NCBI GenBank assembly: GCA_051294905.1
Contig: CM119386.1
Location: 4,960,001-5,024,000, forward strand
From: Botryllus schlosseri
Taxonomy: Eukaryota
Direction: 5' to 3'
DNA length: 64,000 nucleotides
The translations under genes and the position numbers were made by a program. The notes under the pieces are model-generated. The model did no database searches and was not told the DNA's origin. It worked only from the letters and a program-made list of their open reading frames with translations. Below, one piece after another: positions 14,797-63,099 of the stretch (position 1 is the stretch's first letter; each line of letters starts with the position of its first letter).

Positions 14797-14941
14797 CCTA
14801 CAATGTTCTGTTCAGTTCTCTACTAGTTGCTGATGATTACCCCTGACGAGTGTCAGCCGAAAATATTCGGGTTCATTTCAATATGAATATATACTAATCA
14901 ATTGTATAGGCCTGTTGAAGTTCTGCACCTCCAAGAAGTTC
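14797..14941 (+). mobile_element. Penelope-like element 3'-end fragment (~150-bp dispersed repeat)
   Basis: High identity to copies at 43630-43790, 44310-44410 and 62995-63300; homologous to the sequence just downstream of the GIY-YIG ORF at 57120-57225. Confidence 0.75.
14829..14872 (+). ncRNA. Minimal type I hammerhead ribozyme (intact core)
   Basis: ACCC-CTGACGA-G-TGTCAGC-C-GAAA-ATAT-TC^GGGT: stem I ACCC/GGGT, CUGANGA and GAAA core, 1-bp stem II, 1-bp stem III capped by a palindromic tetraloop, UC cleavage site. Confidence 0.75.
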
Positions 14942-18600: not shown

Positions 18601-21600
18601 TGATTTACTAGCTTTCCACAGCTCATGTTCTACGCCGGTGAAATTGCTCTGTCCACACTATTTGAGGTACACGATTTCATGAGGACAGATACAATTCGTC
18701 ATCATTGGTACCAATGTAGCAGTTCCCAAGTAAAAAGATTTCCAAGTAACTATTCTAGGCCTACTTCAGTTTTGAGAACTGGATGCACTTTGGAAGTCAG
18801 AACAACTTGAGTCAGTAATGCAAGCAGGCAAAACCTATCAGACTACTACAAGAATTACTTGTTACAATATTGAATTTTGTCTACGGCCAGTTCTTTCCGA
18901 TCCCCTTAGCGAGCAATTGAACCTCTCTCAATAGTCTAATGTCATTAGATCGTATCTCACCATGGCTCCCGACGCGAACGGGTAAGGGGTGCTGACATGA
19001 TACGGCGTGCCCCGTGGCGTGCCCAGGTCGTCTGCCAAGTCGTTGAACGCTGTAATTTAAAGATAAGAATATTTTCTACTCTTTCCCACCAACAGACCGT
19101 ATACTACTATACTAGCCTGATTCGTCGTGTCTGTAAGGAGACGGCTGGTTTCCAGGACCGGTACGGATATGCCTCGCCAGGTCCTGCCGCTTGATTTTTT
19201 CCAGCGCATCTTTTAGAATCATTTCTGTCGGAGAGGTTCAAGTTATTTTCGTGAAACGCAATAAAAAAACGCTATTATTACACCACGAAAATGCACGAAG
19301 TAACCTCACTTTGGTTCAACGGGCAAGGCAAGAATTGATAGTATGAAATAAGAAATGAAGATTAAGGAGTCTTACGTCACAGAACAAGACAAATCACAAT
19401 ATTTGCTCGAAAAGGAAAGATAAATTTGAAGGTGGAATTTCATTAGCAAACACATATCCGTGTCTAATTGATTGCAGTCAAGCATAAAACAAGGCGTTAG
19501 CAGTGAAGACACAACTTTTAAACGCAAGTACACAGATTGGAAGTACAAGTCCTGTTGGTGATTTAACAATAGCGAAAATGGGTTAGTTGTCATGACAATT
19601 TCAGTCATAAACGTGATGAAAACATATCCCGAAACTGATTGATATTTTATACAAAATTAGTCGGAATCACGAGTAGTAGAAATCTCACCGCATTCGTATT
19701 TTTGTCGATTCTTCTCGTACCAAAGCGTCAGCAGGCAGAAGCCCTTTTCACCGTTATCGCCGCCGCACTCTTTCTGAATGTTCCACACGGAGCTCTCGCT
19801 GATGTCCAAATTCCTGGCCAGCTCCATCCATTGCAGGCCCAGCTCAGACGCTATGGCGTGGAACGACGCTTCCAGATTACCTGTAAATGGATGTTGCTGC
19901 TTGATGCTTTGCTCTTCCAGATATTATCATTGCTATTAGCTGTCAAATTTGAATATCACGGATAAAACACTAGCTAAGTCAACTTGATATGGTCCCTACT
20001 TAACACCCATGTACCTGGCCTCCAAGACAAAATGCTTAACGTAGCGATATATCAGCTTACCACGTGTTGCATATTAACCCACATTATGGTTATTTCACAT
20101 TACCAGTGCAATGCACAAACTCTGTGGAATTCTCTTGTTACAGACTACATAAACTCATTGTTTTTTTCGTTCCAGAGACTAATTTTAACACAAACCTGCA
20201 TATATCTCTATTGAGTGAATCTGTGGAATTAAAAATTCACACACCTCAGGGTAGCAGGACTAAATAATAAGCTAAATATTGGTACAGCTCAACTTAAATA
20301 TTTGATTGACTACTTTACAGTTTCAGTTTTATATTTCTTGCATTAGATATAAAGCATCACAATATATGCGCTTGTGAAGTCTCGAGTTACAGCTATACAC
20401 TGTAGCGTCAGTTTGGTGGTGACATCTTTCGACAGCATGGACCAGGTATAGGCCTACGAGTGAAACAGTATGAGATGATCGTACGTTGTACAAGGCGCAA
20501 GCACGGTGTGTAAATTCACCAACTGTACTGCCACAAAGGCTGCCCTGGTCTCAAGGACATTGTATAGCAATGATGCTGATTGACATCAAAACGCATCAAC
20601 CCACACCGATGACATGCAATCCATAAAATTCGCACATAACGGCAAAAGATACGAGGATACAGAAGCAACATATACATGAAATTATGCGAACGACAAATCG
20701 CGAAAAAACAACGTACCATGTTACCCACAAGTAACATGGTCGACATTACCCTGCGAATACGCCATACAAGCACAACGATTTCAGCACAACGTCCAACAGT
20801 TCTACTAACTCTGGCACCGAGCAGCGTCAGAAGTTCCAGAGTATTCCCGCCTGACCGATGACACATCAATTACAGAGCTCGAAGCAGACTCTGCAGTTTC
20901 GGAAACATTGCTGATTTCTTCACAAACATCCGTCTGTGACGAAACAACTGTGCGATGCGCCGTTTCAGAATGTAACGCGCGGCTTTGGCAAAACGCGGCC
21001 CATTGATGATCCTGAACAGTTTGGAGTGAGCCGGAAGTCCGTGAAATGTCACGCACAGAAGTTTCGTAGGCGACTTGATTGTCCCACCACTGCGTCATCG
21101 GTATGACGGGATTATAATCGCATGGTTCCGGCGTAGACTCAAATTGTGAAGATGTAACCAATTCTTTCCGCATTTCCAAGGTCTCTCTCTCAGAGCTGAC
21201 AACACGAGTCATATCGTGCCTTGTATACGAGGCATGACACTCTGCTTCAAGAGATAGTTCTCCAAACTGAACATTAGGCATATCTATATCTTCAACGTGT
21301 CCTGACACATCAGTCTGTGTAACTGTACGTAGAGTACTGTGGCTTCGTGAAGACGATTCAGAAGAATTAACCGATTGTACATAATGTTCGTTCGAATCTC
21401 TGCGACTAATCGCCAATCCGTCGGACACAACGCAATCCGTAACCGCACCAGACCACACAAAGCTCGTCACTTCGCTCCCGACATTTGTTACCGGTATTCC
21501 AGTAGAATAGTTAGCAAGCTTGGACTTGTATTCGGCCTCTTGTAAACCATAGTGATCGTAGCGCGAATCTTGTGATGCGTAGTACTGGTGGATGTCGCCG

Positions 21601-24600
21601 GCAAACGGAATGGTACGTGAAATGGGCTGGGTAACATTATCTGTAAAGGGAATCGTTTCCATACTTGTAGAGCGTATTCCGGATGCTTGGTCGCTGCCTA
21701 TGCATTCCGCATCTGTATTAAACATATTACTGCTGGCGGGCTGTGGAGAAGTACACAGGTCTGTTGCGAAATTGATTAGATTGCGGGATGTTTCCTTTTG
21801 ACTTTCAGAAGACAGGCTATCAGTTTGACTCGCAAACGTCGCCAGTGCCAAATTGGTAATTGCTCTTTCCTGAGGACCGTGTGAGCCATGATTTTGCATC
21901 TCGTCGCCATCATTTTCAGATATGGTCCATGACACAGACGCTGATTCGCGTGTCTCGCTGTAGAAATGGCTTTGTGTATTGTCCGTATCACGAAATTCAT
22001 GAAATTGTGATTTCACATCGTCTTTTACATCTTCAAGATTGGACAGTTTTAATCCACCACTTGCTAAACCTGTTACCGATGTCAATGCAGAATACAAAGT
22101 TGCGTCCTTTTGTGGCAGAAAATCAGTAACGACGGACCCAGTCATCGATTCATTCGCTAAATCAATGTCCCGAGAAGCAGCAGTGTCTATAACATCTCGG
22201 CACGGACTATTTCCTGCATATACGTCGTCGTATTTGTTTGAAAACAACACAGATTCCACAGCTGTTGATTCCGTGCTGTGTTGATTACCCAGAGTTACAT
22301 CTGAACTGTATTCCTGGGTAAGTTCATCATAATTTTTGTCGCGGCAATCCGATAACAGAGGAGCCGAAGGTATGACACCAGCGTTGGATCGCGGACTGAC
22401 ACAAAAATCAGTCTCTCGGTCTGAAGCTAATCCATAAAAGTCAAGCTCATTCACAGCACCTGTGCCTTTACGAAGACACAAAACATCGACGTTACCATCA
22501 CCCGCAATATCTTTGTGTAAAATAAAATCGGAATGAGCCAGCACACGTAAATCTGAGCGGATATTTTGCGTGGCGAGTGAAGGATCCCATTTTTCATTCG
22601 TTGCAGTGTGCGCCATGGAGACGTTGACATGGATATCCGCTGTTTCGGGACAGCTGTAAACAGCACCAGATAAATCTCGAAGATTGGCTTCCTCCTGGCA
22701 CGCGTCATCATTGCATTCCTCAATAGAATTGACCTCATCGTTACAATCTGCATTTTTATTAGAAATACCCGACAAGCTTCCCGCAACGGGGGATTCTGAT
22801 GCTACATTTTCATCATCGGGATAAATGTGCTCGTTTTCCTGATCTCGATCATCAATCGGATGAAATTCCCCGCATTCAGAAGAAGACGAGCTAGTTGAAG
22901 TGTCAGATTCGGCGAAATTATCTGTCCGTTCATTGGTTTTATGCGCGTCGTAACCCGCACCATCGACAGCACAGATTGTATCACCCTCCAACGAGTCTAG
23001 CGACACGTTCGATTGATAAGCTTGCGATTGGAACAAATTATCAAAGCGTTCGCGATTCTCAACGTCCTGGGCAATATCTTGCTCACTCTGCACGCATGCA
23101 TCACTTTCTGAATTTTCCGCTTCCGACGCGTTAGCATCGTCATCGATCGCTGTACTGTCGCGGGCTTGACAGGATCCGTCTGTCGACGTGACTACGACGG
23201 TGGGAATAGCGGTATACGCAGCCGCAGTGTCTGAAACCCGTTGACATTCAGAGGGCTTCGATGTTTCAGATGGTGTTCCATCTGTGCCTTGTTCAATATT
23301 AGACTCGGAAGTCAGCTCGTAAGATTCCCTCCTGTATTGTGCAGTGCTCCATAACTTATCGTACACGTCGTCTAAATCGACGTCTGCCTTTGTGTTAGCA
23401 TCTGACCGGGCTGTGGCAGTTGAAATGGACGAATCGACAGCGATGGAGTTGCTTATTCTGTCATCATCATGAGAGGTTTCACCCTGGTGTATTTCATTTG
23501 AGCTTTTTTCGGACCCCGGGTTCCACTGGTCTGAAATACCAGCGCAGTCGGTAGACGACACAATTCCAATCTCAGTTTTCAAATCAGATTTGTGATCTGT
23601 ACTACCATCTGTTTGCACTAACGCAGGGTATTCTGCGATACCTTGATTTGTCGTAGCTACGGAAGTATTGGATTCCGATGATTGTGTGTCAGGAGAATGT
23701 AACATGTGCGAGAACGCAGCTTGTTCTTGCGACACAGGAGAAACTGACTGTAGCGACAGCACAGAGGCGACACACTCGGAATCGGAATCAGAATGATCGC
23801 TTTTGTCTGTATTTTCATCCGACGAATAGTGGCTACTGTCTGGTCTGACTTTTGGGGCGATTGAATTTCCGTCGGAAGGATGCGAATCACGCAAAGACGT
23901 CGAAAAGAGATCGTTCCTAGTATTGTAGGTGTCCGTGTCGTACACACGTGTGGCGGTTTGAGACAGCAACCCGTAGTGTACCAGTGGCGTTACATTATCA
24001 ACACTATATCGTTCTTCAAAACATTTTTGTTCGCTTGATATTACAGTTGTGACATGCTCAACGTGGGCAATATTTTCAGTCAATTTGTCATGAGCAAAAT
24101 CGTCTTTGCACGGTTCCGCGCATTCTTGTACATTACAGACTGCGGTTAGCGGTACAGGCGTTTCCTTGATGTCAATCAGAGCATCTTGGGCGGCGTTGTG
24201 ACCCGTGTTCTCGGTGGTGCCTCCAACATCATTTACGCTGTGTTCAGGCGGCACGTCATCAAATTCTTCGAGTTTGAAATCTGTTTGTATGTCGCGATCT
24301 TTATTTTTGGAACCACTATCATCAGACGTAACACTGTCGGTATCATCATTCGGGATGATTTGCGTTGAATCTGATTCTTGCACACTGATGTGAGGTGATA
24401 AGGTTCCATCAACAAATTCATGATTTCCTCCAGCATTGACTTCACGATTCCTGTATATACTCGACATGGTTGCGAGCGATTCACCAGGCGGCAAAAAACT
24501 ACCACCACTGTAAGGAGTCGGGTGTACATCAGTCCACACGATGCACATATCTTCATGCGCGCCAGCACCTTTTTCGAGTTGCCCTGGATATTCTTCTTCG

Positions 24601-27600
24601 CCCAAATTACTTTGTGCCGCTTGATCACAAGATGGGTTGAACACTTGTTGGAGTTTCCACAGTAGATTATCTTCCGCATCGACAGCCTTGTCAATTTCAG
24701 AGATTATATCATTATCCGCTAAGCCACAATCTATTGGACGTTCCAAAGTTGGTGCTGTCAATAGTTCTAAGTTCGATTGCTCGGCGGACACAATATTCGT
24801 CGCAATGTTATTTTTGACACCATCGCCCTGTCTCTTGTCATGAATTAGATTTCCGATGCCTTTCGACAGAGTTAATTCCGAGTCTTGATAACACTCAGTT
24901 GACTGCTGTAAACACGCATTTGCATCCTGATTTCGTCTGCACATCTCATCTGCTTCCTCATTCCAAGTACTTTCCGTTTCATCATAAACTGCGTATACAT
25001 CAATGTCACGATCACTAGAACATGCTTCATCAGGGCTTTGCGCAGGGGTGTTATCTAAACCTTCGTCTGCGTCCAATGTTGAAGTCTGTTTAACGGTGCC
25101 GAATTCTTCAGTGACAGGCGAACTGGTTACAGCTGAAAACGTTTCTGTGACGTCACACTCTGAAGTAGAATACAAGATACTTTCGTTTTCATCATTGACT
25201 TGGTTTAAACAGTTTGCCGTTGTTGACTGTTCTGACATTGTAGTTTCAGATATGCAGCTTTGATCAGTGAAACCAGCTTCGATTCCAACAGTGTTGATGA
25301 TTGCAGGGTCAACTGCTTTTTCAGTTTCAAAGTCCACGACACAATCACTAGCCTCAAAAACTACGTTGGGTGAGTCATCTACAGGAGAATGCTGTTCTAC
25401 CACCGACGTGTCGGTCGAAGATTGTTCGGAAGTGGAATATCGATGTTCGTCAGCGTTACTGTCTTGGCCTGAAATTTCTCGTAGAATCAGCTGGTCTTCT
25501 GTTGTAGTTTCTGTAACGGAGCTGTCCCATTCCGAGGCAGATTCCCTAGGTTCTGAATCAGACATCTCCACAAACTGTACACAATCGAAAGTGCAAGGGT
25601 CACGACCGATTTGATCTAAATTCGGAATTGAAAATTCCAACTGTCCATCTACAGCAGCAGCATTTGTGGTGTCATTTCCGATAGCTACATTCAAATCATG
25701 ATTGCCAGCGTCCCCAGTTAGCGCCTTGGCTTCTTCCAGAGCAGGTGGATCAACATAAACCGTTTCTGCGAGATGATACTCTGTATGTATTTCACTCTTA
25801 ACAGCATTCCGGTGCACAAGTACAGCTCGATCTTGGGAGCAATCCAACTCGGTTGTATCAGATTTTTGATCCAAGCTCTGAAGAGAGGTTTGTTTTTCAC
25901 TTTCCGCAACTGCAAGTACACGATGTTCGTCAGTTACATCAGAGTTACTTTCGCCTTGTGATAGTGAACGCTCAGTGTGATCATACCCCATGACAGGTTG
26001 ATAATCTTCAAAGACGTGTACAGGTTGTACACAGTGCCCTGCATCGCTGAGGTTAGAGGGTAGCGCCTCTTCCGGCGTCACTGTTACGGCGGTGCAGTAA
26101 TCTTCACTGTCTTGTAGAGTAGTATTGGAAACTAGTGTTGAAGGACGTTTCATAGTTTGTTGCGTGGGTGGCACGAATTCAGCCTTGTCATTGTTCTTGG
26201 TGTTATTAAAGTCATCTTGAATTAAACATGCGCCTTCATCACAGATCTTTTCAGCAGGCGTCAATTCCGTGCTACTGGAACTACCTTCAATGACAACCAT
26301 ATCTTTCACAGTAGCGTGAGGGATTTGACTAGTCTGTTTTTCGTCAGACGTAAATTCCGCAACGTAGCCATCTTCGGTCGCACCAACAAGGTCCTTGACC
26401 ACACAAGGAATTTGTATAATAGAATCAGAGATTTGAATTGCCCCTTCATCTTCAGTGATACCAAAATGATCTTCGCTGATACCTGCACTCTCTGAGATAG
26501 CATCGGGGCTTTCAGTAGTCTGTTTTTCAGGCGACATAAATTCAGTTAATTCTGTCATGTTGACATCATCCGCTGTTCCAAAATGATCTTCAATGACACA
26601 AGTCACCTCTTTTGCAGCATCTTGGCTTTGAGTGGTCTGTTTTTCACGTACCGCAAATCCTTGGATGTGGCTATTATCTTCACCCGTACACGTGCCCTCT
26701 GCAGCATCAGAGCTGCCAACTATCCATTTTTCAGATTTCAATTCTGTGACAAAGCCATCTTCATCAACACCGAAATTATCTTCACTAACATACAGGACAT
26801 GCTCAATAGCAGCATGAATTTCGGTTATCTGTTTTTCAGGTGATGTTAATCCTGTGGCATCACAATCTTGAGTGCTGTCAGCTGCTTGTCTTACAGGGAT
26901 CTCCGATGATTGTTTTTCAAGTGATGACAACTCTGCGACATAGCCATCTTCGACAAGACCGAAATTATCTTCACTGACATAGAGATCATGTACTGTAGCA
27001 TCAGGGATCAGGGTTGGGTTTTCATCAGGTGAAGTCAAGTTATCGATGTAGCTATCGTCTGTTGCATCAAAATGATCTCCGGTGACACTTTCAATGCGTA
27101 CTGCGACGTTAGAGATCTCGTTATCTTCAGTTGTATCAGAGTGATATGCACCAACACCCTCAGCTTGTACAGCAGCATTAAGGAACTGAGCTGTCTCTTC
27201 TTCAGGTGATGTTAATTGTGTGATGCAGATACCTTCAGTTACATCTTCGATGACACCCTCAGCTTGCATAGCAGCATTAGGGATCTTGAGTGTCTGTCCT
27301 TCAGATGATGCCAATTCGGTGACATAGGCATCTTCAGCAACATCGAAGTTGTCTTCTCTGGCATACATACCATGTGCAACAGCATTAGGGATCTCAGTTT
27401 TCTGTTCTTGAGGCGATGTCAATTGTGTGACACAGCTGGTATCAAAATGATCTTCACTGACACTTTCAGCTTGTACAACAGCATTAAAAATCCCAGTTGG
27501 CTGATCTCCAGGCGATGTCAATTGTTTGATATAGCAATCTTCAGCTTCATCAAAATGATCTTCACCGACAATTTCAGTTTGTAGAGTAGTAATATGGATA

Positions 27601-30600
27601 TCAGTTGGCTGTTCTTCAGGTGATATCAATTGTGGGATGTAGCTACCTTCAGTCTTACCAAAACTATCTATTCCGACACACGCATCATCTACAACAGCAT
27701 CACGACTTTCGGGTACCTGTTTCTCCTGTGATGTCAATTCCTCAACACAGCCATAGTCAATGCTACCAACATCATGCTCAGTTTTCTCGGGAGCTTGACT
27801 CACAAATTGATTTGTCCCAATTTCAATAACCGAAGACGCGCCTCTGACGTAGTCGGGGGCAGTATCACACGAATCCTTTTTCACGGCATCGACATCATCA
27901 CCATGAATGTCACCATAAGTTTGTTGCTCCGCTGAAACAATCTTTTCCACACAAGTACCTTCACATCCAGAAAGGTCATCTGAAGTAGCGATAAATAGGT
28001 CGGTATTCGCATAATCATTCCCAGCTAGTTGTTCAGATGGAGCGGTCACTGCGATACCAGAATATTCAGCATCCACAGACATTGCAGATTCCTCATAACA
28101 ATCGGCAATTGGGTTTTGAGAGTATTCAAGCTTTGCATGGGTTTCATCTTCCGATATCGCAGTTTTTTCAACAACACTCGCGCCATCAGCAGCAGTGTCA
28201 AAATTCAAAATTTCATGTTCATCTGGGCTAGTTTTTTCATTTTTAGAGAGAGAAGACTCACCATCACCCCAACGCTGCTGCTGTATATCAATATCAATAC
28301 ACTGATGTGTGATGCCTTGTCGTGCAATGTTTTCAGAGAGAGCGGGTACCGTGCTTTCAGAGTAGAGGAGCGGTTCATACGTGGTTGAGCGAAGATTTGG
28401 TTCTGAAAATTCAGCGGGAATAGGCTTTGCTAGCACTATGATGGAATTGTGCTCACTGTCATCTTGATTTTGCTCCACACGATTTTCCAACACCAATTCC
28501 ACAGCTGAATTTTGATCTGCGACTTGATCATTCTCATCGTAAGGTGGATCATGTTCGTCGTCAATATTTTCCTTAATGGCGTCAAGACCACGCTTGGCAA
28601 TGTCCAAACTTTGGTTTGTGAATTCTTCATGCGCGGCTATCACATCTTGATCAGTACTTATACCAAGCCCCTCTTTTGAAATAGGTTTTGCATGCGGATC
28701 GGGTGAAACTAAGTCATGATCAAGTATTTTACAGGTTTCATCAGTACTGATGAATTTCTGTGTTGCCATGTCTTCTTGACGAAATCTTTTGGCGTCATCT
28801 GCCTTGGCCGTGGTATATCCTTCGAAGTATTTTTCATCTGGTGGGCACGCTATACTTGGCTGAGCTTGAAAATCTTCACAAATATCATCCTGTGAACTTT
28901 GAATTGGAACCAGATTGACGGTAATCTCTATACAATCGTCGGCGGTAAGCGTGTCTTGTTGAGTGGCGCCCAAGGTATGTGCTGAGATATCTGGCACAGA
29001 AAGTGATCCTACAGTCGCTTCATCATTTGAGTCTTCTGGAGATTGACATGTAGCCTCATATTGACTTGTTGGCTTTGTAGCGATTTTATCAACAACAAAG
29101 TCATTTTCCCCACTAATGAAATCGTTTGCTGTCGATCGCTCAGTCATTCCAGATGCGATGATGTGACTTTCTTCTGCTACATGCAGATCAGGTACAGCAC
29201 CATGACAGTTGCCCTGCGTCTCTTCTAGAATCAATGCCTCAGCTGTGCTTGCGTTGATAATATCTTCATCTGCACGTAATCGATCTTCAGTAATATCATC
29301 ATTTGAAGCATCTTTCACAGCAGATTGCAGAGCGAAGTTCATTTCAGTGGTGTGACAATCGCTATCACGATAATGGTCTTGTAAAGCATCAACGCTACTT
29401 TGACCGCAAAAGTCTTCGGTAGCAGGGTTTTTATAGGGGGCAGTCTCTGTAATAGCATCTTGAACACTGACAGGTAATTTCTGATTGCACTCATCAAGGT
29501 TGTGGCGCTGATCATCTTTTGGTGTCATTTCCTGAAGTTGTTGGAAGTGCGTGACGCAATCATCTTCAATAGTGGAGTGATTCTCATCAAGCAGATTATC
29601 CTGTGTTGTCTGTTCGTCAGTACAATCTTCAACAAAGTCATCAGCTTCAGACCGATCTTGCCGTGGAGTGGCTTGAGATGAAACCTCTTTCGGAAACGGT
29701 TGGTCACAATGGTCAGTCAAATGTGATTTTAAAACCCAACTATCAGCAGTTTGATCAACAGCACCACTAGGAAGTTCGTCAGGAGTCATATTTTCAGCTT
29801 GTTCGATAAGGTTTTTCGCAGCTTGATTACTTGCTCCTGATTCTATTTTGTCATCAGTTTCACCGCCATCACAATCAGCATCACCAATTTCTGCATCAGC
29901 TGAAGCTCCTTCATTCATTGTATATTTAACAGTACTTGAATCAAACTCAGCAGATTCCACTACTTGGTCAGTAGTTCTGCTGGCAATGATAACGCCAGGG
30001 ATTGGAGTTGACAGTTCTTCGGAAACCTGTTGCCCAATCGAAGCTTTTTCAGTAGTGCTACAGTCTTCGACGACGCCCAGATCACAGTCAACGGGTTGTT
30101 CGTCCGAGATATTTTGTTGTTCCACATTCGCATGTACTGGCGACACTGATTTTGCGTAGTGCAAACCGCCATCGAAACACTGCTCATTTTGGAATGAACG
30201 CTCTTCTACAACTACTGCCGAAGAAGTTTTCAGTGCGAGACCATATGCATCATGTTTCAAAACATCTCTATCATTACTGGAAATAATTTCCGTTGCTAAT
30301 TTTTCATCGAAAGGCTGTTTCAAGTTTGCTTGATCTTCAACAGTCTGAAAACGATCCAACTTTGAAAATTTCAAGATCATTTGCTTGACCGAGGTCGTTC
30401 CGCTAACGCACCCCGTATCATGCTCTGCGTCAGATGTATTTTCAACAGACCCTTCACCAGCATTACTCCGTAGGACAGGCTCTAACACGCCATCATCTTC
30501 TGCAAACAAACTACCTTCTGACAGATATTCTTCATCCGAAACCGACTCACACTCCATGCCACGTTCGAGATCAACATCTTGAGATGCAGGACATTCAGCA

Positions 30601-33600
30601 ATATCATCATCTTCTTTACACTGGTCGACACTGTTACGATTTTCCTCCGAACTTTTGTATGAATCAAGCTGATGACCAGATGAGGATTCTGCGCGCCTAT
30701 CACATTCATAACCGTCTGCCTTTTGAGCAGACATACTCTTTTCCTTGAGTTTAAAATCTTCATCGCAGCCATGTTGCTCAGTATGGCGGAACTGGGCGAT
30801 TGGTTGCTCGTGTGCTGTTAGACTGTGATTTTGTTGGACAGGACTTGGCTCCCCGTGTTGCTGTTGTGAGACTACCCCTTCTACCGCAGGCTTTTCGAAA
30901 ACTTGCTTTTTGACAGAGACCGATACCTCTGTACTCTGGCACGAGGTTTGGTTCGAATTCGATTTTTGCGCTTCGAGCAAAATCATTTTGTCAAACTTCT
31001 GCACCATTGTCGCGGTATTGACAGGGCCATATTCTTCATCCGAATCAGAGCAAGGCTTTACCTTGGACACATGATGTACATGGGCTACATCTGCGTTATT
31101 TTCAGAAGATTGCCGAGACGTGCGATTTGCATCGACACACTGGTCTTGTTTCACATCATCAAGGTTTTCAACGGAACACATTTCTTTATTGCGCTGCTGC
31201 TGTGAGACTGCCTTCATAGGCTTTTCGAAATCTTGCTCTTTGTCAAAAATCACGACCTCGGTATTTTGACATGAAGCTTGGTTCAAACTAGGTTTTTGTG
31301 TTTTAAGCGAAATCATTTCGTCAAACTTCTGAACCTTTTTTGCAGCGGTGACAGTATCGCATTCTTCATCGGAATCAGGGTTTAACTGTAATTTGGAAAC
31401 ACTTTGTATGTGGGCTACATTGTGTGCAATGAGATGTTGTTCAGTATCATCAAGATTTTCAAACCGACAGGTTTCTTCAGAACACTGCTGCTGTGAGACT
31501 ACCTCTTCCACAACAGGCTTTTCGAAATCTTGCTTTTCGTCAGAGACGGACGCCCCGGCACTTTGGCACGAGGCTTGGTTCAAATTTGATTTATGCGCTT
31601 CAAGCGCAATCTTTTCGTCAAACTTCCGAGCAATTGTCGCGGTGTCAACGGAACCATATTCTTCGTCAGAATCGGGGTACGGTTGTACTTTGGAAACACT
31701 TCCTGCGCGGGCTATATCGTCTGCGATACGATGTCGTTCGGTATCGTCAAGATTTTCAACTGAACACTTTTCGACAGCATGATGCTGCTGTAAGACTATC
31801 TCTTCTATCGCAGGCTTTTCGAAATATTTCTTTTTGTCGGAGATAGATACCCCGGTACTCTGGCACACGGTTTGGTTTGAATCTAATCTTCTCGTTCCAT
31901 GGGAAATTATTTCGTCAAACTTGCGTACCATTCTCGCGGTACTGAGAGGGAAGTATTCTTCATTTGGACTTACGTGGGCTACGTCGTCTCCAATACGACG
32001 CTGGTCTGCATCATCAAGATTTTCAACGGGATACGTTTTTTCATCATGCTGCTGCGAGATTAATTCTTCTACAGGGCTTTTAATATCTCGCTCTACACCA
32101 ACGACAGATTCATCGTCAATACTGTCTTGCTCCAGCTCACAATCAGTGTCATCGTAATCTTCACTTCGAGACGAACACTGTGACACACGATCTGCGTTAA
32201 AATTCCCACCGGAAAACACCGAAGGCTCCATCATGTAACCGATCCTGCAATTCTCAAACTCAGCATACGCTTCCACCAACGACATGTCCCCGTCGTAAGC
32301 CGTAACACTAGAACTGCCTTCACCGGCTGTTCTTTCCACGTCGTGCATGATCTGATAGGCTCTGTTCACGACTTCAGACGGGCCCGACTGGCCCTTGGCG
32401 GATTCTTCCATGGGGCTATGCATGTGATTTTCAAATTGCTTCAAAAGACGACGTACAGACGTGTGGCTAGTAGCGTCTACTGCAGGTGAAGTGTTAACTT
32501 TACAAGAGACAGATGAAGTATCGCTAGTAGCATTAATGGCGTGCAACGCGCCCGCTTTACCAGAAAACGATGTATCGCGTTTTGAACCACCCGTATTTTC
32601 GATTGCCGAAGACGTTTGCGTCTTATCGTTAACACGCAATTCGCGTAGTCTCTCGCGCTGATAAATCATTTCCGATTCCAGTGAAGACACGTCCGTGCGC
32701 AGTTTAGACGAGCCTTTACTAGCGGTCTCAAAGGCCTTCACTCTGTCAACCACAAAAGCATTCGACGCGATTACCTCTAAAGTGGGCGATCTGTGCGCAG
32801 ATGCCGCACAAACCAGTCGAAAATTTGAAACACCTTCGGAAGATTTCAAGTTTTGCTGTCCGTCAACCAAGTCTCGGGCTAGAAACTCAGAAATATCAGA
32901 CACATCGCCAAACGCGCCAGGTGACTTTGCGGGCGCTACGTCCTCGATATATTCATCCACACCAGCCGGACCAATTCGTTTTTCGCCACGCCTGCCAGAC
33001 CGACCGGCCCGGTCCAGATTTTTAGACAAAAACCCAGCCATGTTATCTACGGCGTTTACGTCGCGCTTTACCACCTGGCGTAAAATATCTTCAGATAACT
33101 GTACGCTTTCTTGGCACCACGCCACAAATTCATTTTCAACGTCTGACCTTTGAGATGGGCTGGTATGGGTTGATGATTCGTTATCTTTACTCGAATTAGG
33201 GGTGGGTGCCGAAATTTTGACGATTTCATCAGATAGATCACTTTTCCGTAATTCTACATCTTTGTCTCTGGTTCTAATCTCGTTTTTATAACTTTTTTCG
33301 TCGTTCATGAAATTTTGATTATTATCCTTACTAATCTCAGTGGTAGTGACAGATACACTTTGGATTTCTCTCACTTTTCTGCTTTCAGATAACTTTCTAT
33401 AGCACGCGGTCTTTTCTTCCAGCAAAGTCTTCACCTCAGCAAGACTGCTCTTCATCTCGGCGATGAGCTCGGCGCTTTCGTCGAAGCTCGCAGAGCGACT
33501 CGGCACTTTCCCGAGATCTGACGAATTCGAGCCGGCCGACTCGGGGTCTAGAATTTGACGGACCGCGACCAGTTTGCCCATCACTTCGGCCACATCGACC

Positions 33601-36600
33601 GGGGACAGGCCCTCGTTGACGTGACAATCGTCGCTGTCTTGAAGTTCGGCCACTGTGATCCCCGCAACAGCAGCATGATTGAAAAAATAGCGCGTCACAC
33701 TACTTCCGATTAACATTTTTAACAAAATTTAATTTTAAAATGATTTAAAACAAATGTAGATTGCTTACCCATGCTGGGGTCCACCAGGTAATATCGTTCT
33801 TTCGTTTGCGTCAAATCGACGGCGGGTTCTTCGTCGCGCGAGACATCCGCGAATTCCGGATCCTGAAATCCAGATTTGTTCAGTAACAAAGTACTTTTAT
33901 TGAACTTACAAAGTAGTTACTGGGGTGGATATGTTTTTAGACTACTTTCGTTTGTACTCGAAGATTTTTAAGAAAAACTACATGCCGTACTTTTTACAAT
34001 TTGCATTTCATAAGGCAGAAGGTAGTAACCAAGTCACAAGGATTCGAGTCACAAGTCAATCTCACTTTTATAGTTTGGACTCGAGTCAAGTCGAGTCATT
34101 TTCAGTTCACCGCCAAGTCACTCCAAGTCACTGTGTTTACTGTTCAGTTGAGTTCAATCTGGTTCAACCCACTATTCTCAACTCTGCTCGAGTCATATGG
34201 CTCGCATTCATAATATCGTAATTTTCCTCGGTATTAACAGTTACTGGCCCTATTTCCCAACTATCAGGACTGATAGACGAAATACCGATAACATGGTGAC
34301 TTTCCTATTCTTTGAAGTTACAATGAAATGTCAGTCTTGGCCGTCCCAGTCTAGAGTCATGCACGTGAAAAAAATGACTCGAGGAAAGTCGAGTCACCAA
34401 AAAATCGTGACTCGAGTCGTTACAACCCTGTATAGGACCCACGTGAAATAGTACCTATGTGTAGTGAGTGCTTTTAGTTGTTTTGTGTTAGTCCCGATGA
34501 TATATATTCAATGGATGCTAAAGTATGAGACCCAGCAACAAAATCTACTTTGTAAAACTACTTCCTTAGTACTTTAACGGGCTTTCATTTTCTACGTCCA
34601 CATGAAGTAGTTTATTCATGACCGCAACAATAAATAGATAAGAAACCTTTGGAATGGAAATGCTAGTTTTTTTGGTCTGGTGCAGTTTGGTTGTAAATAA
34701 ACGAAGTCGAAACAGGATGTCTTTTGAATACGGATTAGTAAAATTACAACGCTTTGTGCTTTTTGCTCTTGTGTCAATTGAAATACAATAGACATAATCA
34801 AAACAACCGTAACTGCTTGCATCATCTGGCAAAATCAACGTAAACTCGAACAATCATATGATATGTGATTGTACAATGTACAGTAAAGAATCATCTACCT
34901 TCAGTAACGTCGGAAGCGTGATATTCAGATTACACATCGCTTTTCTTGCGCCGTGAATCTTCACACCTCTTTCGTCCCGATAAAAACTCAACCGGCCCGT
35001 CACGTCTTGGCTCGCGTCACGCGTCTGCAACAATCCAAACAGTCCAAGTACTGGATCTGCCACCAACTTCAATTTCTGTCCACATTTGATTTAGAACGCA
35101 ACGCACCCAACGTACATAGATCACAAAACCACAAACTTCTCTTATCAACTCTAAACACTCACCCGGACCGAGAAGTGCAAGCGGTTTTCACGGAACGGCT
35201 CAAACACGCAAGTCGGCTGTGTTTGTTTCGTCAACCCCAAATTTCCGGCACATTCCACAAAAACGGACGACCCCTTCAATATTTCGATATCGCGACTTCT
35301 TGCGATCTCAACAAAGTGCTCTTGATTTTCCAAGGTTCTTTCAGACCTGAAATTTGAAAGAATGACGGAATGAAAAAGATAAAAAGAAATAAGTCGTATC
35401 ATACTTTTCATCCGTGATGCAAAACACTCTCAATTTCGTCTCAGTAGCGTCAACCCTTTTGGCCAGAACCACGAATTTAGCCAAGTAAGGCACCAGCATC
35501 GCTTCTTCGTAGATTTTCTCGGCTATCGCGACAGAATCCGCGCTCGGCAGACAGTTGACCAGCCAGAATCTGTTTGCAGAACGCATTCGGGTGATAATAT
35601 TATCAAAAAAGCCACAAAGGATCGCTTACTTGGCTGATACGGTGGATGTGAATGACACGTGGTCGTCGTGAAATTGGAGGGGCGTTGGAGTCGTTATGTC
35701 TTGCCAAAGGGCAGGGTCGGTGCCACCTGTCGAATGCGGCATAAGGTAAAATGCCATAAATATCTGCATTGAGCTATGTGGGCTATCTGATGGTATACAC
35801 AGAAGCAACTAATACTATGGAAGTGGTTCTCAACCTGGTTAGATGCTTGTCGATTAACAAGAGAAACGAAACATAAAATATTCAATTTAGAAATTTGGAA
35901 AGTATATTTCAGAATGTATTTCCAATTAGAGTTTGTGGTCTACCCACTGATATAGAAGAAGTGGTTCCTGGGCTTCGGTCATATCTCAAATCCTAAAAAA
36001 GGTGCTCAAAAAGTTATCAATAACTGTATTTAATCATTCAATGCCTGAAAATACATACCGATATATATACGTTATGTCACTAGTATAGTGAATATACAAC
36101 AAAATGCTACATCAAAAACCATACCTGATATACTACAAAGCAGTCTCAACGATGACTCTTCAGAAGTGCTAATGAATGATTTCATATCTGATCCCTCTGT
36201 AAAATAATTAGGACGCCGCGTAAGGTTAAGCGAACACGTTATACTGTTTTGACGATCGCTTACCAGGATACGGCAGACCAATAACAATAGATTTGTGGAA
36301 CTTTCGTCTTCTTGGCTCAACAGTGATGATAGGACTCGCTTTGGCGGTGTTGCCAACGGCACGCTTGCAAAGGTCGGAGGAAATAGGGCATGCCTGCATT
36401 GAAAGTAGTATATGAACAATTTGTATAAATTCAACAGGCCAAGTAGGCTGTGCTGACAGGATAGCAACAAATTTGCTATCCATCCATAACTGTGTCAGTA
36501 AAATGTCAGTCACAGATATAATATCCAAAGATTTTCAGGTATTCCACCAAGTATTCTATTTAATCTCAGGCATCAGGCATGTGAGATGGATACTGTGATT

Positions 36601-39600
36601 ACGTTGAAAATTTGTATAACAGGAATTAATCTACAGTGTATGACATAGCTATACGGTCAAAACCAGTATGTCTGCTGATATGAATGTAGGCTTGTGGGGC
36701 ACTAGCGAAACATGGAGAGATTAAGAGAAGAGATTCACGACAATAGTTTTAAATGGGGCACATGGCGCAATGGCAGAGTTGGCAGGCTTTCAGCAGACTT
36801 TATTTTCTGCAAGTTACAATTGATTCTTAGGCATGTGGGGCATGCAACAGAATGGTATGTGAGAATTGTGCAGGTGTCAGGTTTAAGGCCAACTTTGAGG
36901 CGTCATTATCCATTGTGGCAACCGTTACAGTTATGCGGTGAATGCGATACAGTGAATATCATATAGAATTAAATAGTATATTCAAATTGAAATGAACCCA
37001 AATCTTGTCGGCTGGCAATTATCAGGGGTAATCGTCAATAGTTATTAGACAATTGAAAAGAACATTGTAAATCAACAAATGTATCATACTTGGGTTCATT
37101 TCAATAGGAACATACTATTCGATTCTACATTGAAGTTCTGTACCATCAATATATCGTAACAATCGTACCTGAAGTCCCACACGGATCTCTTTGGTGAGAG
37201 CATTTTCGGGAAAGGTGGCAGAAACGTGCTTCACAATCCGAGACGTCAGGATGCCGCCGGCCGGGCCGACGGCGCAGAACTCTTCTTTGGTGCGCGAATA
37301 CAACGCAAAGTACTTGGGCAGGTCTTTGGAAATGACTCGTACCACGTGTCGTTTGGAGAGTTCTCCGGCCGACTCGAGGTCTAAGATTACAAAAGGAAAG
37401 ATGAAACAACTTCCAAATCTGACGAATCTGCGGTGAAAATTGAACCCAATCAATGCTGACCTATCTTCCCAAGCGTACAAGCATATCAATTTTTCTGTGA
37501 TTTCTTCAAGTGTTTCAGATTTAGCGTTTGGAAATGCGTGCTTCTTCCACCGTTTTGAAACTTGTATTAGTAATAGTAGACCGAAGAGGGCGTTTGAATA
37601 ACGGACTTCACCAGATTGTTTTGACTATCAGCTATACTACCAATGAACATACAGACCCACTTTAAATAACAAGTTCTGCTTCCCTGAACAGTGAACATTT
37701 CATGCCAAAGAAGCATCATCACAGGCCTAATATTCCTACATTAATTCAGATAAGTTTGGCAGGCTGCATCAAAAAGTGACCTGAGAGCAGAGATTTTGAT
37801 AGAGTATTTCGCAGTACTGTAAATCTCAAATTGGTGCACAGCTAGATATGAACAGTAGCTATTTCATCAAATTCGATATGTGTCATATACAAAAATCACA
37901 GCCAGTAACCAAATTCGTCTTTTCTTATGCGGGATCCCAATAGGTTATGGCTAATCATTGCACAAACTGTGATTCTTAACACTGAACGGCGTGAATTGGT
38001 AAAAATTAGACAATCTTCAAGTTAGCTCACACCGGAAGATTTCACCATACCAGCAGAGTCTGTTTGCTTCAGAAACTCTTCGTCCGAACACGCTTGCTTA
38101 TGTTCCCTCCAGATCTCGCCGTCGTCGGACCTGATCACGACAATCTCTCTTTCCGAGCCCCGCAGGCTTGCGAAGTGCGGGATTTCAATGGCGATAGGTC
38201 TAAAATTCCCATAAACCAGTTACCGGCAAGTGAAAGCGCAATAGCATGATAGTAGCTCAAAATCATAGTATAAGGTGCATTTGATCCAGAATTTCAAAAG
38301 CGGTGAAGTCAACTTTGATTACCAACCCACACAGAAATCATCACATTTGGTTGTGTCATTAAAGCAATTGAACCAGTACACTTCAAGTTTGGGGCACATA
38401 CATTTCATATTTAATGACACAAGAAAAAGTACTATGGCAGTCTTTGGGTAGATCAGAAAAGAAAGACAATTTCGTTAATCTAAACATCTATTGCAAAGGA
38501 GTGTGCAGCCAAGACTGAACTATGACTACTTGAAGAATGCGAGCATTCATCCTACAAGGATATCATCTACCATAAATTACATTGTAGAATATTTGACTAG
38601 TCACCATTGCGCTACTCTCAAAAGTGATACCAGGGAGAAAATACTGACCTCTGAAAGTCTGGGCAGAATATTTGAGACATCTACATATCTACACGCTTAA
38701 GGGTAGCAATTTTGAAGGAAAGGTTCAAGTTCGGCATAACATGCGATTTGTACGTAACATCGCACTGGTCTACGAAAGTGACTACAACCTTCTAATGAAC
38801 GCTAAAAAAGAAGAAATATAAAAACAAGACTACGTATATATTATACATCCACGTATATCAAGCAACCACCGACATACCCATAAATAACACCGACACCACG
38901 TATCACAATGACAAATAATAATCAAAAATAATCAGGATATCCGATTTCAATTTCTGCATCGGCGTAATTACGATAACGACGCACTTACAACATGCATAAT
39001 TCCAGCTGATCGACTGTGGTCGATTTTACAACAAAATTCCAGAAATTTTGGAACTTTCACATTCCACGAGGTGTAAAATTGCACAAAACATTGTCGGAAT
39101 TTTCCAAATTAAAACAGCGGGGGAGTGCAGCGTCTCAGCTGATGGCATGCGGTCGCATATAGTCGACAAATTACTACGGATGTGATGCATACACAATTAC
39201 CGTCCTGGCAGTGTATTTACCTACGAAACCGGCACGACCGGGGCCCAATCGCCATGACTTTGGCCACTAGCTTCTGCCCCTCGTTCAAAGGGATACGTAC
39301 GGGCGCGCGACTGCATCAACACCAGAAAACTTCGATAATTCGTAATGGCAAACGCAACAGCGCGCAATACTTACTGCAAGAAATGTTTCCCTTTACCACC
39401 AAAGTCTAGAATGCGCGAGCTTTCGCCTTCGTCTTCGCAAAGGGGTAGTTCGTCTGTCGTCGCGTTCCCGTCAGGTCGGTATTGTCTTTTTCGCGCCAGC
39501 CTGCACGTTATTCTGGTCGGAGCATTGCAGGCGCTAGGCGGGACGTAGATTCTCAGATTTGGATATCTCGTTCCGCGCATGCTGCCTCCGCGAGCGTCGA

Positions 39601-56189: not shown

Positions 56190-57119
56190 CTAAAATCAAT
56201 AAAGAAATGTAAAACATGATTCCAATATTCATATAAAGGCATGGAGCAGGTGCCGCAAAGCACCAGGTAGGCAAGCCTTCGACACGCCCACCACATCTGG
56301 AGAATTGCAATCTCTCCAGATATGCAAGATTTTGGCAACACAACACAATACTTGACATTGACCACAGGTTAATTTTTTGATCGGGCACTGCTCACAGCGT
56401 ACTGTAGATCGATTTTGCTTTATAAGTTACATAAACAGTATACGAACTATAGAGGAAAAATATCCAGCCAGTGGTTTGTTATGATTGATACCAATTTGCA
56501 CAGCATAATCATTCAAAGACCCTAACCTAGCCTATATAGTTGGATTTGAAATAGACGCTTGAAGAATTCGTACAAATGTAATTTAACCTAAACTACAAAG
56601 TTCGATCAGGTACCGTAATGTTAATAGCCCTGCCTATAGCTATGATACAGCTGTTGCAGCGAAGGGAAATCATTTAACAGAATCAGGCCTTGTGAATAAC
56701 AGGTAACAATATAATAAATGAGATTCGACACAGATACAGAATCTTAAGTAGAAGAAAAAAACATTGCAACAGTGGACTTACACTACTGGAGGTGGATTCT
56801 GACTTGACCATACTCATGGCAGGGAGTTTCTGACTTCACTGCTTCATAGGATCTATATTATTACAATAAATAAATTACGATACACCCTGCAAAAGCATAC
56901 ACTTTCAAACAATCTCAAATTTCCTTCTACAAATTTTGAGTACGGTGATACAAAAAGTTCGTACTGAGTAACAATATCAAAAGATATGAAGATACTACAG
57001 ATAGCTTATAACCATGGATAGCAAGAAGCGTAATCCTAGCTAATTGCATTAAATGGAAAATGAAGGAAGACATATCAAATATGCTTTTACTTTGCAAACG
57101 TTCAACATAAATATATGAA

Positions 57120-58333: not shown

Positions 58334-58899
58334 CAGGGTTGTAATGACTCGACTCGAGTCACAATTTTCTGATGACTTGACTTGAGACATTTTCTCAAAA
58401 TACGGAAACGACTCGACTCGAGTCTATTTTTGTATTGACTCGACTTGGACTCGAGTCATTGCGCATGACTCGAACCAAGTCATACGACTCGAGACTCTGA
58501 CGGCCAATACCGACATTTCATTGTAATTTCGAATAGTAAAGTAACCACAATATTGGGATTTCGTTTATTGGTACTGGTACTTGTAAATGCGACCAGAAAC
58601 TGCTAAAAGTGAGGAAAATTAGTGTATGGTATTGTAACTGCGAACCAATCGATATCACTAAACAGATTTATAAAGAGTATGTTTAACAAAAATTTAACTG
58701 GAAACTGAGCAGTCAACACAATGACACGGACTCGGACTCGAGTAATAAAACCGTTACTCGGACTCGACCCTCTGCTCGCTGCCTTGGACTCAGACTTGAC
58801 TCGGTGGTGAATTGAAAATGACTCGACTTGACTCGAGTCAAAACTATAAAAGTGAGATTGACTTGTGACTCGTAACCTTGTGACTTGGTTACAACCCTG
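58334..58899. mobile_element. hAT-like MITE, 566 bp, with many GACTCGAGTC/GACTCG repeats
   Basis: TIRs CAGGGTTGTAA / TTACAACCCTG; flanks GCGAAAAC / TTGAAAAT (degraded TSD). Confidence 0.8.
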
Positions 58900-63055: not shown

Positions 63056-63099
63056 ACCCGAATATTTTCGGCTGACACTCGTCAGGGGTAATCGTCAGC
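63056..63099 (-). ncRNA. Minimal type I hammerhead ribozyme (intact)
   Basis: The reverse complement reads GCTGACGATT-ACCC-CTGACGA-G-TGTCAGC-C-GAAA-ATAT-TC^GGGT. Confidence 0.75.

What the first reader, a model, noticed from the sequence alone, without database searches (positions are those of the whole stretch)
20810..33652. 12.8-kb giant ankyrin cassette exon in the vertebrate AnkB/AnkG position in an invertebrate-type genome
Seen: one stop-free 12,843-nt exon, phase 1 at both ends, between the post-UPA exon (33769-33862) and the death-domain exon (19689-19880). Skipping gives a ~1,630-aa ankyrin and inclusion a ~5,900-aa one. Established: giant AnkG and AnkB arise from one exon of roughly 6-8 kb between UPA and DD, and giant AnkG organises the axon initial segment; giant ankyrin isoforms have been reported across bilaterians. 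Inference: if this is a tunicate, it has a much longer exon in the vertebrate slot, which bears on whether an AIS-type scaffold predates vertebrates. Gene predictors would probably miss it or split it off as a separate gene.
Basis: partly seen in the sequence, partly recalled or inferred. Interest (0 to 1): 0.85.

Follow-up and report, generated by a model that had tools for sequence, protein, structure and literature searches.

The report
Giant ankyrin exon in Botryllus
This is the 12.8-kb "long exon" of the single ankyrin gene of the colonial sea squirt Botryllus schlosseri, sitting where vertebrate giant ankyrin exons sit; it is real, but a near-equal exon in the same slot was verified in the sea squirt Ciona in 2016.

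Summary
A 12,843-nt stop-free exon lies on the minus strand (33652..20810), with an AG acceptor, a GT donor and phase 1 at both ends. It sits between the last UPA/post-UPA exons and the death-domain exon of a canonical ankyrin gene. The chance of such an open frame is about 1e-111.

The gene matches the published Botryllus schlosseri ankyrin transcript almost residue for residue, so the host is a tunicate. The insert is 4,281 codons: acidic (pI 4.25), with no Pfam domain, no PDB relative and no confident predicted fold. Its only detectable relative is a colinear 4,160-aa ORF from one related organism.

RNA-library contigs cover the exon at about a tenth of the depth of neighbouring exons and skip a control intron. 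No contig or read across either junction of the giant exon was obtained.

Jegla et al. 2016 (PMC5135030) PCR-verified a 13,344-bp exon in the same slot in Ciona and argued that giant ankyrins are ancestral to bilaterians. They had only the short form for Botryllus.

Verdict: a new member of a known kind, of modest interest.

The parts
20810..33652 (-). Giant (long) ankyrin exon: 12,843 nt, 4,281 codons counting the split codons, phase 1 at both ends
   Evidence: Stop-free in one frame only. AG acceptor at 33654-53 and GT donor at 20809-08. Covered patchily at depth 6-8 by contigs of RNA runs X1 and X2. Its 3' half is held by 12 RNA-labelled runs.
32091..33650 (-). Conserved N-terminal module of the insert (aa 1-520): blocks of near-invariant sequence separated by variable linkers
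   Evidence: 75% identical to P0001 residues 2-524, with long invariant blocks. In 100-aa windows, 60-85% identity, against 62% over aligned positions for the whole exon. 6 of the 7 listed variants here are synonymous. No fold predicted: mean pLDDT 34.5.
30859..32015 (-). Array of 4-5 tandem units of 297-330 nt (99-110 aa) inside the exon
   Evidence: Families D1 and D5. TRF period 297, 2.4 copies. Copy number differs in P0001, shown by a gap at aa 700-1000.
26734..27737 (-). Array of about 10 units of 99/108 nt (33-36 aa, '...TSPEEQTTEIP...EDHFD...') inside the exon
   Evidence: Families D2 and D3. TRF periods 99 and 108.
21351..21650 (-). Conserved block near the C-terminal end of the insert (aa 4001-4100)
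   Evidence: 72% identity to P0001 with no gaps.
33769..33862 (-). 94-nt post-UPA exon directly upstream of the giant exon ([31 protein letters not shown] + 1 nt)
   Evidence: Sequence and frame. Its acceptor is confirmed by an X1 RNA contig joining 33861/2 to 34898/9, with GT..AG intron ends on the minus strand, at depth 62.7.
34899..35024 (-). Last UPA exon ([14 protein letters not shown]...[12 protein letters not shown])
   Evidence: Pfam UPA_2 profile positions 91-130. Its start is confirmed by the X1 loose end at 35163: the 8 loose letters, reverse-complemented, equal the first 8 bases of this exon. Its end is confirmed by the X1 joint.
19689..19880 (-). Death-domain exon 1, directly downstream of the giant exon
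   Evidence: Pfam Death E=4.2e-06, profile positions 3-62. Acceptor ...catttacAG|GTAATC and donor |gtgaga. In frame with both the giant exon and the 94-nt exon.
19117..19224 (-). Predicted death-domain exon 2 (108 nt, apparent GC donor; an in-frame TAG follows if it is not spliced)
   Evidence: Sequence reading and exon-chaining script only. Not verified by RNA.
56782..56817 (-). First coding exon of the ankyrin gene (MSMVKSESTSSS)
   Evidence: Identical to the N-terminus of Botryllus schlosseri transcript Bsch_comp567235 in Jegla et al. S2 Table.
34899..56189 (-). ANK-repeat, linker, ZU5-ZU5 and UPA exons (34 curated exons between the start-codon exon and the 94-nt exon)
   Evidence: Pfam Ank, ZU5 and UPA_2 hits on stop-free segments. 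Curated chain has 0 internal stops and consensus splice sites. The first ~400 aa match Bsch_comp567235.

Best explanation
The ORF is the long exon of the single canonical ankyrin gene of Botryllus schlosseri, or a very close relative. By position it corresponds to the PCR-verified 13.3-kb long exon of Ciona ankyrin and to the giant exons of vertebrate AnkB and AnkG.

Skipping it joins the 94-nt post-UPA exon straight to the death-domain exon and gives an ordinary ankyrin of about 1,690 aa (185 kDa). Including it inserts about 4,281 residues (468 kDa, pI 4.25, 19.5% D+E, 19% S+T, no recognisable domain). The insert lies between the spectrin-binding ZU5-ZU5-UPA module and the death domain, and gives a giant ankyrin of about 5,970 aa (650 kDa).

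Shown here: the anatomy, the phases, the host gene, the identity of the organism, conservation of the open frame in a relative, and presence of the exon sequence in RNA libraries at lower depth than the constitutive exons.

Inferred from the Ciona, vertebrate, fly and worm giant ankyrins: inclusion is neuron-specific. The long, disordered, acidic insert would let membrane- and spectrin-anchored ankyrin reach axonal partners such as microtubules, helping to organise the proximal axon. The conserved N-terminal ~500 aa would act as a set of short binding modules, and the rest mainly as a length- and charge-dependent spacer.
For: 1. Exact ORF, splice sites and phases. P(no stop) is about 1e-111, and the other frames carry 153-474 stops.

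2. Pfam finds Ank, ZU5 x3, UPA_2 x3 and Death, in that order, around the exon.

3. The window's exons equal Bsch_comp567235, including the start peptide and a 24-nt micro-exon. Jegla et al. list that transcript as a short form, so a skipping isoform exists.

4. P0001, from another organism, is a 4,160-aa ORF that is colinear from the first residue after the acceptor (AELQD...) to the last before the donor (...CQS*). Identity is 62% over aligned positions. The frame has therefore been kept open over 12.5 kb in two lineages, and conservation starts and stops at the predicted splice sites.

5. X1 and X2 RNA-run contigs cover the exon at depth 6-8 and neighbouring exons at 62-93, while the non-repeat intron 34501-34897 is at 0. 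Twelve RNA-labelled runs from at least 4 studies hold 7-34% of the sampled words of the exon's 3' half.

6. There are no transposon or other Pfam domains and no copy elsewhere in the window.

7. There is no AATAAA or ATTAAA in the 929-nt downstream intron and no strong internal donor.

8. The acceptor has a weak pyrimidine tract (8/17 against 10.6 +/- 1.8 for 36 other acceptors of this gene), as is common for regulated exons.

9. Precedent: the Ciona 13,344-bp exon in the same slot has PCR-verified junctions and is expressed in the larval CNS (PMC5135030; restated in PMC8192821).
Against: No read or contig crossing 33769->33652 or 20810->19880 was seen. The two raw-read RNA runs were almost empty on this gene. 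The runs are labelled 'RNA?', so the library type is a guess.

Searches for protein fragments spanning the junctions found nothing.

Codon usage of the exon differs from the constitutive exons: GC3 is 0.38 against 0.58, and the RSCU correlation is 0.05. The listed variants are 23 nonsynonymous to 11 synonymous. Constraint on most of the insert is therefore weak.

Neuronal expression and any role in the proximal axon are untested in this species.
Confidence: 0.82

Rival explanations
1. The exon is used as a terminal or read-through exon. The donor at 20810 is not spliced, translation ends one codon later (CQS, then TAG at 20807-20805), and the result is a giant isoform without death domain or C-terminal tail. 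This would resemble the protostome and echinoderm arrangement, where the long exon lies at the 3' side.
For: The in-frame stop overlaps the donor consensus. P0001 ends the same way. The 3' junction was never observed.
Against: There is no AATAAA or ATTAAA in the 929-nt intron that follows. The phase matches the death-domain exon exactly. In Ciona the 3' junction to the DD exon was PCR-verified. A stop soon after a donor is expected by chance in any intron.
Confidence: 0.07
2. The ORF is an independent gene nested in an ankyrin intron and transcribed on its own.
For: The junctions were not observed. RNA depth differs about ten-fold from the flanking exons. Codon usage differs from the ankyrin exons.
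Against: The ORF begins only 24 codons upstream of a consensus AG and ends one codon after a GT. Both phases fit the flanking exons, and the length divides by 3. Conservation with P0001 starts and ends exactly at those sites. The first in-frame ATG inside the exon is residue 24, in the middle of a conserved block. The positional equivalent in Ciona is spliced into ankyrin mRNA.
Confidence: 0.04
3. The RNA signal is unspliced pre-mRNA or DNA carry-over, and the exon is an evolutionary relic no longer included in mature mRNA.
For: Variants look weakly constrained (23 nonsynonymous to 11 synonymous). GC3 is near the genomic background. The library type of X1 and X2 is a guess.
Against: A relic would not stay stop-free for 4,280 codons, nor stay open and colinear in a relative at 38% amino-acid divergence. 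The control intron 34501-34897 has zero depth in the same runs. The N-terminal module has long invariant blocks and mostly synonymous variants.
Confidence: 0.05
4. The ORF derives from a transposable element or another repeat.
For: The window is rich in repeats, and the exon carries internal tandem arrays.
Against: No reverse transcriptase, integrase, transposase or any other Pfam domain was found. It shares no repeat with the rest of the window. RNA contig depth is 6-8, against 16,000-32,000 for a true repeat 300 nt upstream. Only one relative exists among 1.84 billion representative proteins.
Confidence: 0.02

Closest known systems
Ciona intestinalis ankyrin long exon (13,344 bp; GenBank KU495921; Jegla et al. 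2016, PMC5135030)
   Same: Both lie in a single-copy tunicate ankyrin gene. Both are one giant ORF between the post-UPA exons and a two-exon death domain, upstream of the DD. The sizes are nearly equal (12,843 against 13,344 bp). In both cases the available gene or transcript models contained only the short form.
   Different: The host belongs to a different ascidian order (Stolidobranchia rather than Phlebobranchia). A phmmer scan of the first 520 residues found only P0001, so no similarity to any other protein was detected; whether the Ciona protein is in that library is unknown. The Botryllus exon has two internal repeat arrays, while Jegla lists none for Ciona. The Ciona junctions and neural expression were shown experimentally; here they are not.
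Vertebrate giant exons of AnkG (480/270 kDa; 7.7-7.8 kb) and AnkB (440 kDa; 6.2 kb)
   Same: Same slot between UPA and DD. All are alternatively included and encode a long low-complexity insert without globular domains (for sizes and position; established knowledge for function).
   Different: The Botryllus exon is about 1.6-2 times longer. No sequence similarity was detectable by phmmer against 1.84 billion representatives or against PDB chains. Its composition is strongly acidic (pI 4.25). SxIP-like motifs number 9 against 3.0 +/- 1.7 expected, but they sit in acidic repeat context, unlike the basic Ser/Pro-rich EB-binding context. No AnkB-type 12-residue repeats are present.
Protostome and echinoderm giant ankyrins (Drosophila Ank2-L/XL, C. 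elegans UNC-44L, sea urchin)
   Same: All are a very long exon in a canonical ankyrin gene that encodes repetitive, acidic, disordered sequence and gives a neuronal giant isoform.
   Different: Their long exons lie downstream of the death domain, and the repeat units are unrelated.
P0001, a 4,160-aa ORF on a 13,958-nt Logan contig of run SRR25569784 (organism not identified)
   Same: It is colinear over the whole exon, with 62% identity over aligned positions, the same first and last residues, and the same composition.
   Different: It has fewer copies of the ~100-aa repeat and several indels. Its flanks could not be fetched, so its gene context is unknown.

Membership tests
Giant-ankyrin long exon (as defined by Jegla et al. 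2016) | Host gene is a canonical ankyrin: ANK repeats, ZU5-ZU5-UPA, death domain | tested here: met
   Pfam Ank, ZU5, UPA_2 and Death in order on the minus strand. Near-identity to Botryllus ankyrin transcript Bsch_comp567235.
Giant-ankyrin long exon (as defined by Jegla et al. 2016) | One exceptionally long uninterrupted ORF inside the gene, downstream of UPA | tested here: met
   12,843-nt exon within a 4,306-codon ORF. The next longest ORF in the window is 297 aa. P about 1e-111.
Giant-ankyrin long exon (as defined by Jegla et al. 2016) | Bounded by splice sites that keep frame with the flanking ankyrin exons | tested here: met
   AG|TG and GA|GT boundaries, phase 1 at both ends. The inclusion and skipping models both have 0 internal stops.
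Giant-ankyrin long exon (as defined by Jegla et al. 2016) | cDNA evidence that the exon is contiguous with UPA on the 5' side and DD (or the tail) on the 3' side | tested here: inconclusive
   Exon sequence is present in RNA-run contigs at depth 6-8, with the control intron at 0. Fragment searches were empty.
Giant-ankyrin long exon (as defined by Jegla et al. 2016) | Alternative use: a short isoform without the exon also exists | tested here: met
   Bsch_comp567235 is listed as 'short form' from a transcriptome. Depth arithmetic on the X1 contig over the 94-nt exon (30.4 = 62.7 x 97/200) fits a continuation into GTAA, the first letters of the DD exon. This last point is inference only.
Chordate (Ciona + vertebrate) subtype: long exon upstream of the death domain | The long exon lies between UPA and DD, not after DD | tested here: met
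   UPA_2 hits at 34857-35625 and the Death hit at 19660-19923, with the exon between them.
Giant ankyrin as neuronal proximal-axon (AIS) organiser | Neuron-restricted inclusion and localisation to the proximal axon | not testable with these tools
   Run tissues are coded. No in situ or antibody data are available here.
Vertebrate 480-kDa AnkG / 440-kDa AnkB insert (sequence family) | Detectable sequence homology of the insert, including the giant-ankyrin LIR/GABARAP-binding segment | tested here: not met
   phmmer of aa 1-520 against 1.84 billion representatives found only P0001. phmmer of aa 1-1200 against all PDB chains found 0 hits at E<=1. Jegla et al. also found no homology between the mouse, Ciona and urchin inserts.

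The most novel reading that the evidence does not exclude
The slot has been conserved since the common ancestor of tunicates and vertebrates, but the insert sequence has been replaced completely, even between ascidian orders. Botryllus and its relative share a private ~500-aa N-terminal module followed by a hyper-acidic tail of ~3,700 aa (insert net charge about -525) with its own repeat arrays. If so, giant-ankyrin function would depend on length, charge and a few lineage-specific short motifs rather than on any conserved sequence. The botryllid module would then bind partners different from those of vertebrate AnkG and AnkB.
Probability: 0.3. Interest if true: 0.45.

Novelty: new member of a known kind. 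Interest (0 to 1): 0.25.

Why it matters
It fills a gap left open in the 2016 survey of giant ankyrins, where Botryllus was listed as 'short form only, no genome data'. It adds a second ascidian order with the long exon upstream of the death domain. [quoted passage not shown]

Practically, it flags a 12.8-kb coding exon that annotation pipelines are likely to drop. It also gives exact coordinates for probes and primers in a colonial chordate whose nervous system is rebuilt in every budding cycle.

It does not open a new question. Whether an AIS-type giant-ankyrin scaffold predates vertebrates was already addressed in Ciona and Drosophila. What remains open is where the protein sits in ascidian neurons, as PMC8192821 also says.

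Tried and rejected
1. Raw-read RNA runs X19 and X21 were laid to see the junctions. They had almost no reads on the gene, only on an intronic repeat, so they gave no junction counts.

2. Word-index protein searches used the 65-aa segment holding the 94-nt exon and the last 201 aa of the giant exon. The hope was to find transcript-derived fragments crossing the junctions. There were no hits. The tool's length window may exclude long transcript-derived proteins.

3. The contig of P0001 could not be fetched because the sample file is too large, so the relative's flanks are unknown. Its run accession appears in no searchable paper.

4. The ESM Atlas look-alike search gave only weak generic hits (top score 0.75) to disordered cytoskeletal proteins. 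I rejected these as uninformative.

5. The AlphaFold2 model of aa 1-520 had mean pLDDT 34.5. I used it only as weak support for disorder and did not search folds with it.

6. Rfam found nothing in 13000-36000.

7. My exon-chaining script split the giant exon, because its codon usage differs from the training exons. At a low intron penalty it also added false micro-exons. I kept only exons supported by the Botryllus transcript, Pfam, RNA joints or strong consensus. The tail after the death domain is unverified.

8. I considered Branchiostoma as the host, given the high heterozygosity. I rejected it because its published long exons carry more than 160 copies of a 16-aa repeat that is absent here, and because the ANK exons match Botryllus.

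9. The sequences in Jegla S2 Table are stored truncated. A direct comparison with the Ciona insert was therefore not possible.


Full report
**Observation.** The window holds one very long ORF on the minus strand, 20805..33725 (4,306 codons). The next longest ORF anywhere in the 64 kb is 297 aa.

Read on the minus strand, the sequence ...ggggatcacAG|TGGCCGAAC places an acceptor so that the exon starts at 33652. The sequence ...GGTGCCAGA|GTtagtag places a donor so that it ends at 20810. A TAG follows one codon later. The exon is 12,843 nt, which divides by 3.

It is open only in the frame that continues the 94-nt exon 33862..33769. That exon ends with one spare base, so inclusion gives G+TG = Val and skipping gives G+GT = Gly. 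Both routes run in frame into [14 protein letters not shown]..., encoded by 19880..19689.

With the exon's own base composition, the chance of 4,280 stop-free codons is about 1e-111. The other five frames carry 153-474 stops.

**Host gene and organism.** Pfam scans of stop-free segments on the same strand give these hits, in order:
- Ank at 44408-44653
- ZU5 at 39374-39739, 38025-38219 and 36229-36534
- UPA_2 at 35344-35625, 35154-35429 and 34857-35090
- Death at 19660-19923

The exon thus lies between UPA and the death domain of a canonical ankyrin.

The S2 Table of Jegla et al. 2016 (PMC5135030) holds the start of the Botryllus schlosseri transcript Bsch_comp567235. Its first ~400 residues match the window's exons almost letter for letter. 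The match includes the start peptide MSMVKSESTSSS (56817-56782) and the micro-exon KRIVNRIT. I saw two small differences, K/R and TA/AT. The Ciona sequence in the same table is clearly more distant.

RNA contigs differ from the window by 2-4%, which fits a highly polymorphic species.

**Gene model.** I built a chain of exons from consensus splice sites, frame continuity and the Botryllus transcript. It has 36 coding exons upstream of the giant exon (4,174 nt), then the giant exon, then two death-domain exons (192 nt and 108 nt, the second with an apparent GC donor), then an unverified tail.

This gives about 1,688 aa (185 kDa) without the exon and about 5,969 aa (653 kDa) with it.

Two neighbouring junctions are confirmed by an RNA-run contig. 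One is the intron between 34899 and 33862. The other is the start of the last UPA exon at 35024, shown by a loose end.

**What the exon encodes.** The insert has these properties:
- About 468 kDa, pI 4.25, with 19.5% D+E, 7% K+R and 19% S+T.
- Two internal repeat arrays: 4-5 units of 99-110 aa at 30859-32015, and about ten units of 33-36 aa at 26734-27737.
- No Pfam domain, hence no transposon signature.
- No relative among PDB chains.
- No confident AlphaFold2 structure for the first 520 residues (mean pLDDT 34.5).

A word-index search of 5.8 billion proteins and a full HMMER scan of 1.84 billion representatives each found only one relative, P0001. This is a 4,160-aa ORF from a Logan assembly of another organism.

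P0001 is colinear from the first residue after the predicted acceptor to the last before the predicted donor. Identity is 62% over aligned positions and 60-85% in windows across the first 500 residues, where long invariant blocks alternate with variable linkers.

Two lineages that differ at 38% of residues both keep about 12.5 kb open. Conservation starts and stops at the splice sites. This is the strongest sequence-level argument that the exon is functional and coding.

Constraint on the bulk of the insert is weak:
- The listed variants are 11 synonymous to 23 nonsynonymous with no stops. Six of the seven in the N-terminal module are synonymous. Some variants in the repeat array may be cross-mapped repeat copies.
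- GC3 is 0.38, against 0.58 in the conserved exons, and codon preference is uncorrelated.

**Transcription.** Contigs from two RNA-labelled runs (X1, X2) cover most 200-nt bins of the exon's 5' 4.3 kb at depth 6-8. Neighbouring constitutive exons stand at 62-93, and the non-repetitive intron 34501-34897 stands at zero. Twelve RNA-labelled runs from at least four studies hold 7-34% of the sampled words of the exon's 3' half.

This fits a minority isoform that includes the exon. It argues against DNA or pre-mRNA carry-over as the source.

The two raw-read runs were nearly empty here, and two protein-fragment searches found nothing. Inclusion is therefore inferred, not shown.

For skipping there is a published short-form transcript. 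There is also an indirect hint: the depth of the X1 contig over the 94-nt exon equals 97 aligned letters, that is the exon plus GTAA. GTAA is shared by the intron and the death-domain exon, as expected if that contig runs on into the death-domain exon.

The giant exon's acceptor has a purine-rich tract (8 of 17 pyrimidines, against 10.6 +/- 1.8 for 36 other acceptors in this gene). The downstream intron has no canonical poly(A) signal. The exon has no strong internal donor.

**Comparison with what is known.** Jegla et al. 2016 examined exactly this question. In Ciona intestinalis they found a 13.4-kb ORF in the gap between the post-UPA exons and the two death-domain exons. They verified both junctions of a 13,344-bp exon by PCR on larval cDNA. 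They also pointed to in situ data showing expression in the larval nervous system.

Their survey table places long exons upstream of the death domain in vertebrates and Ciona, and downstream in echinoderms and protostomes. The position is undetermined in amphioxus. Botryllus is listed as 'short form; no genome data'. They found no sequence homology between the inserts of mouse, Ciona and sea urchin. They concluded that giant ankyrins are ancestral to bilaterians. A 2021 paper on ascidian sodium channels repeats this and names the subcellular location of giant ankyrin in ascidian neurons as the open point.

The present exon is a second tunicate example, from another ascidian order, with the same slot and nearly the same size. 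I found no paper other than Jegla et al. that mentions Botryllus together with giant ankyrin.

**Mechanism.** The anatomy is shown; the function is inferred. By analogy with the Ciona, vertebrate, fly and worm proteins, neurons would include the exon. The product would be an ankyrin whose membrane-binding ANK repeats and spectrin-binding ZU5-ZU5-UPA module are separated from the death domain and tail by a ~4,300-residue extended acidic chain.

The conserved N-terminal ~500 residues look like a string of short binding or helical modules. The remainder looks like a spacer in which length and charge matter more than sequence.

SxIP-like motifs are somewhat enriched (9 against 3.0 +/- 1.7; three are conserved in P0001). 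They lie in acidic repeat context, so I do not read them as EB-binding sites. I found no support for sequence-level colinearity with the vertebrate insert, which another note on this window proposed.

**Verdict.** It is unproven for splicing-in, and it overstates the evolutionary news. I class the exon as a new member of a known kind, of modest interest.

Noticed in passing
window 33900-34450 (intron upstream of the 94-nt exon); related piece at 58797-58896: A repeat with summed depth of 16,000-32,000 in contigs of RNA runs X1 and X2, with many loose ends. It shares a 100-nt stretch at 93% in inverted orientation with 58797-58896. This looks like a highly transcribed interspersed element, and Rfam gave no match.
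   Followed up: partly
window 14799-14891, 36922-37110, 39634-39740, 43618-43724, 62982-63309: A family of short interspersed repeats in ankyrin introns and beyond. Its 93-nt core contains CTGACGAG...GAAA, a hammerhead-like core.
   Followed up: no
window 19117-19224 (-): The predicted second death-domain exon seems to end at a GC donor (CAG|gctagt). If it is not spliced there, an in-frame TAG follows at once (...RHDESG*). That could give an alternative short C-terminus right after the death domain.
   Followed up: no
window 20811-33650 (-) compared with the constitutive ankyrin exons: Third-position GC is 0.38 in the giant exon against 0.58 in the conserved exons of the same gene, and synonymous codon preference is uncorrelated (r = 0.05).
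   Followed up: partly
window 51439-51462 (-): A 24-nt micro-exon (KRIVNRIT) lies inside the ANK-repeat region. It is present in the published Botryllus transcript and has good splice sites.
   Followed up: yes
window 11179-12867 (-): Downstream of ankyrin on the same strand, stop-free segments read by eye like a Tim17/Tim23-type mitochondrial import protein (...GINPNYLD......GGAMAGGLF...). This was not tested with any tool.
   Followed up: no
window 39221-39310 (-): A 90-nt in-frame ORF piece with good splice consensus lies between the two exons of the first ZU5 domain. My exon chainer picked it up at both intron penalties. It interrupts a contiguous ZU5 sequence, so I treated it as a false or rare exon.
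   Followed up: no
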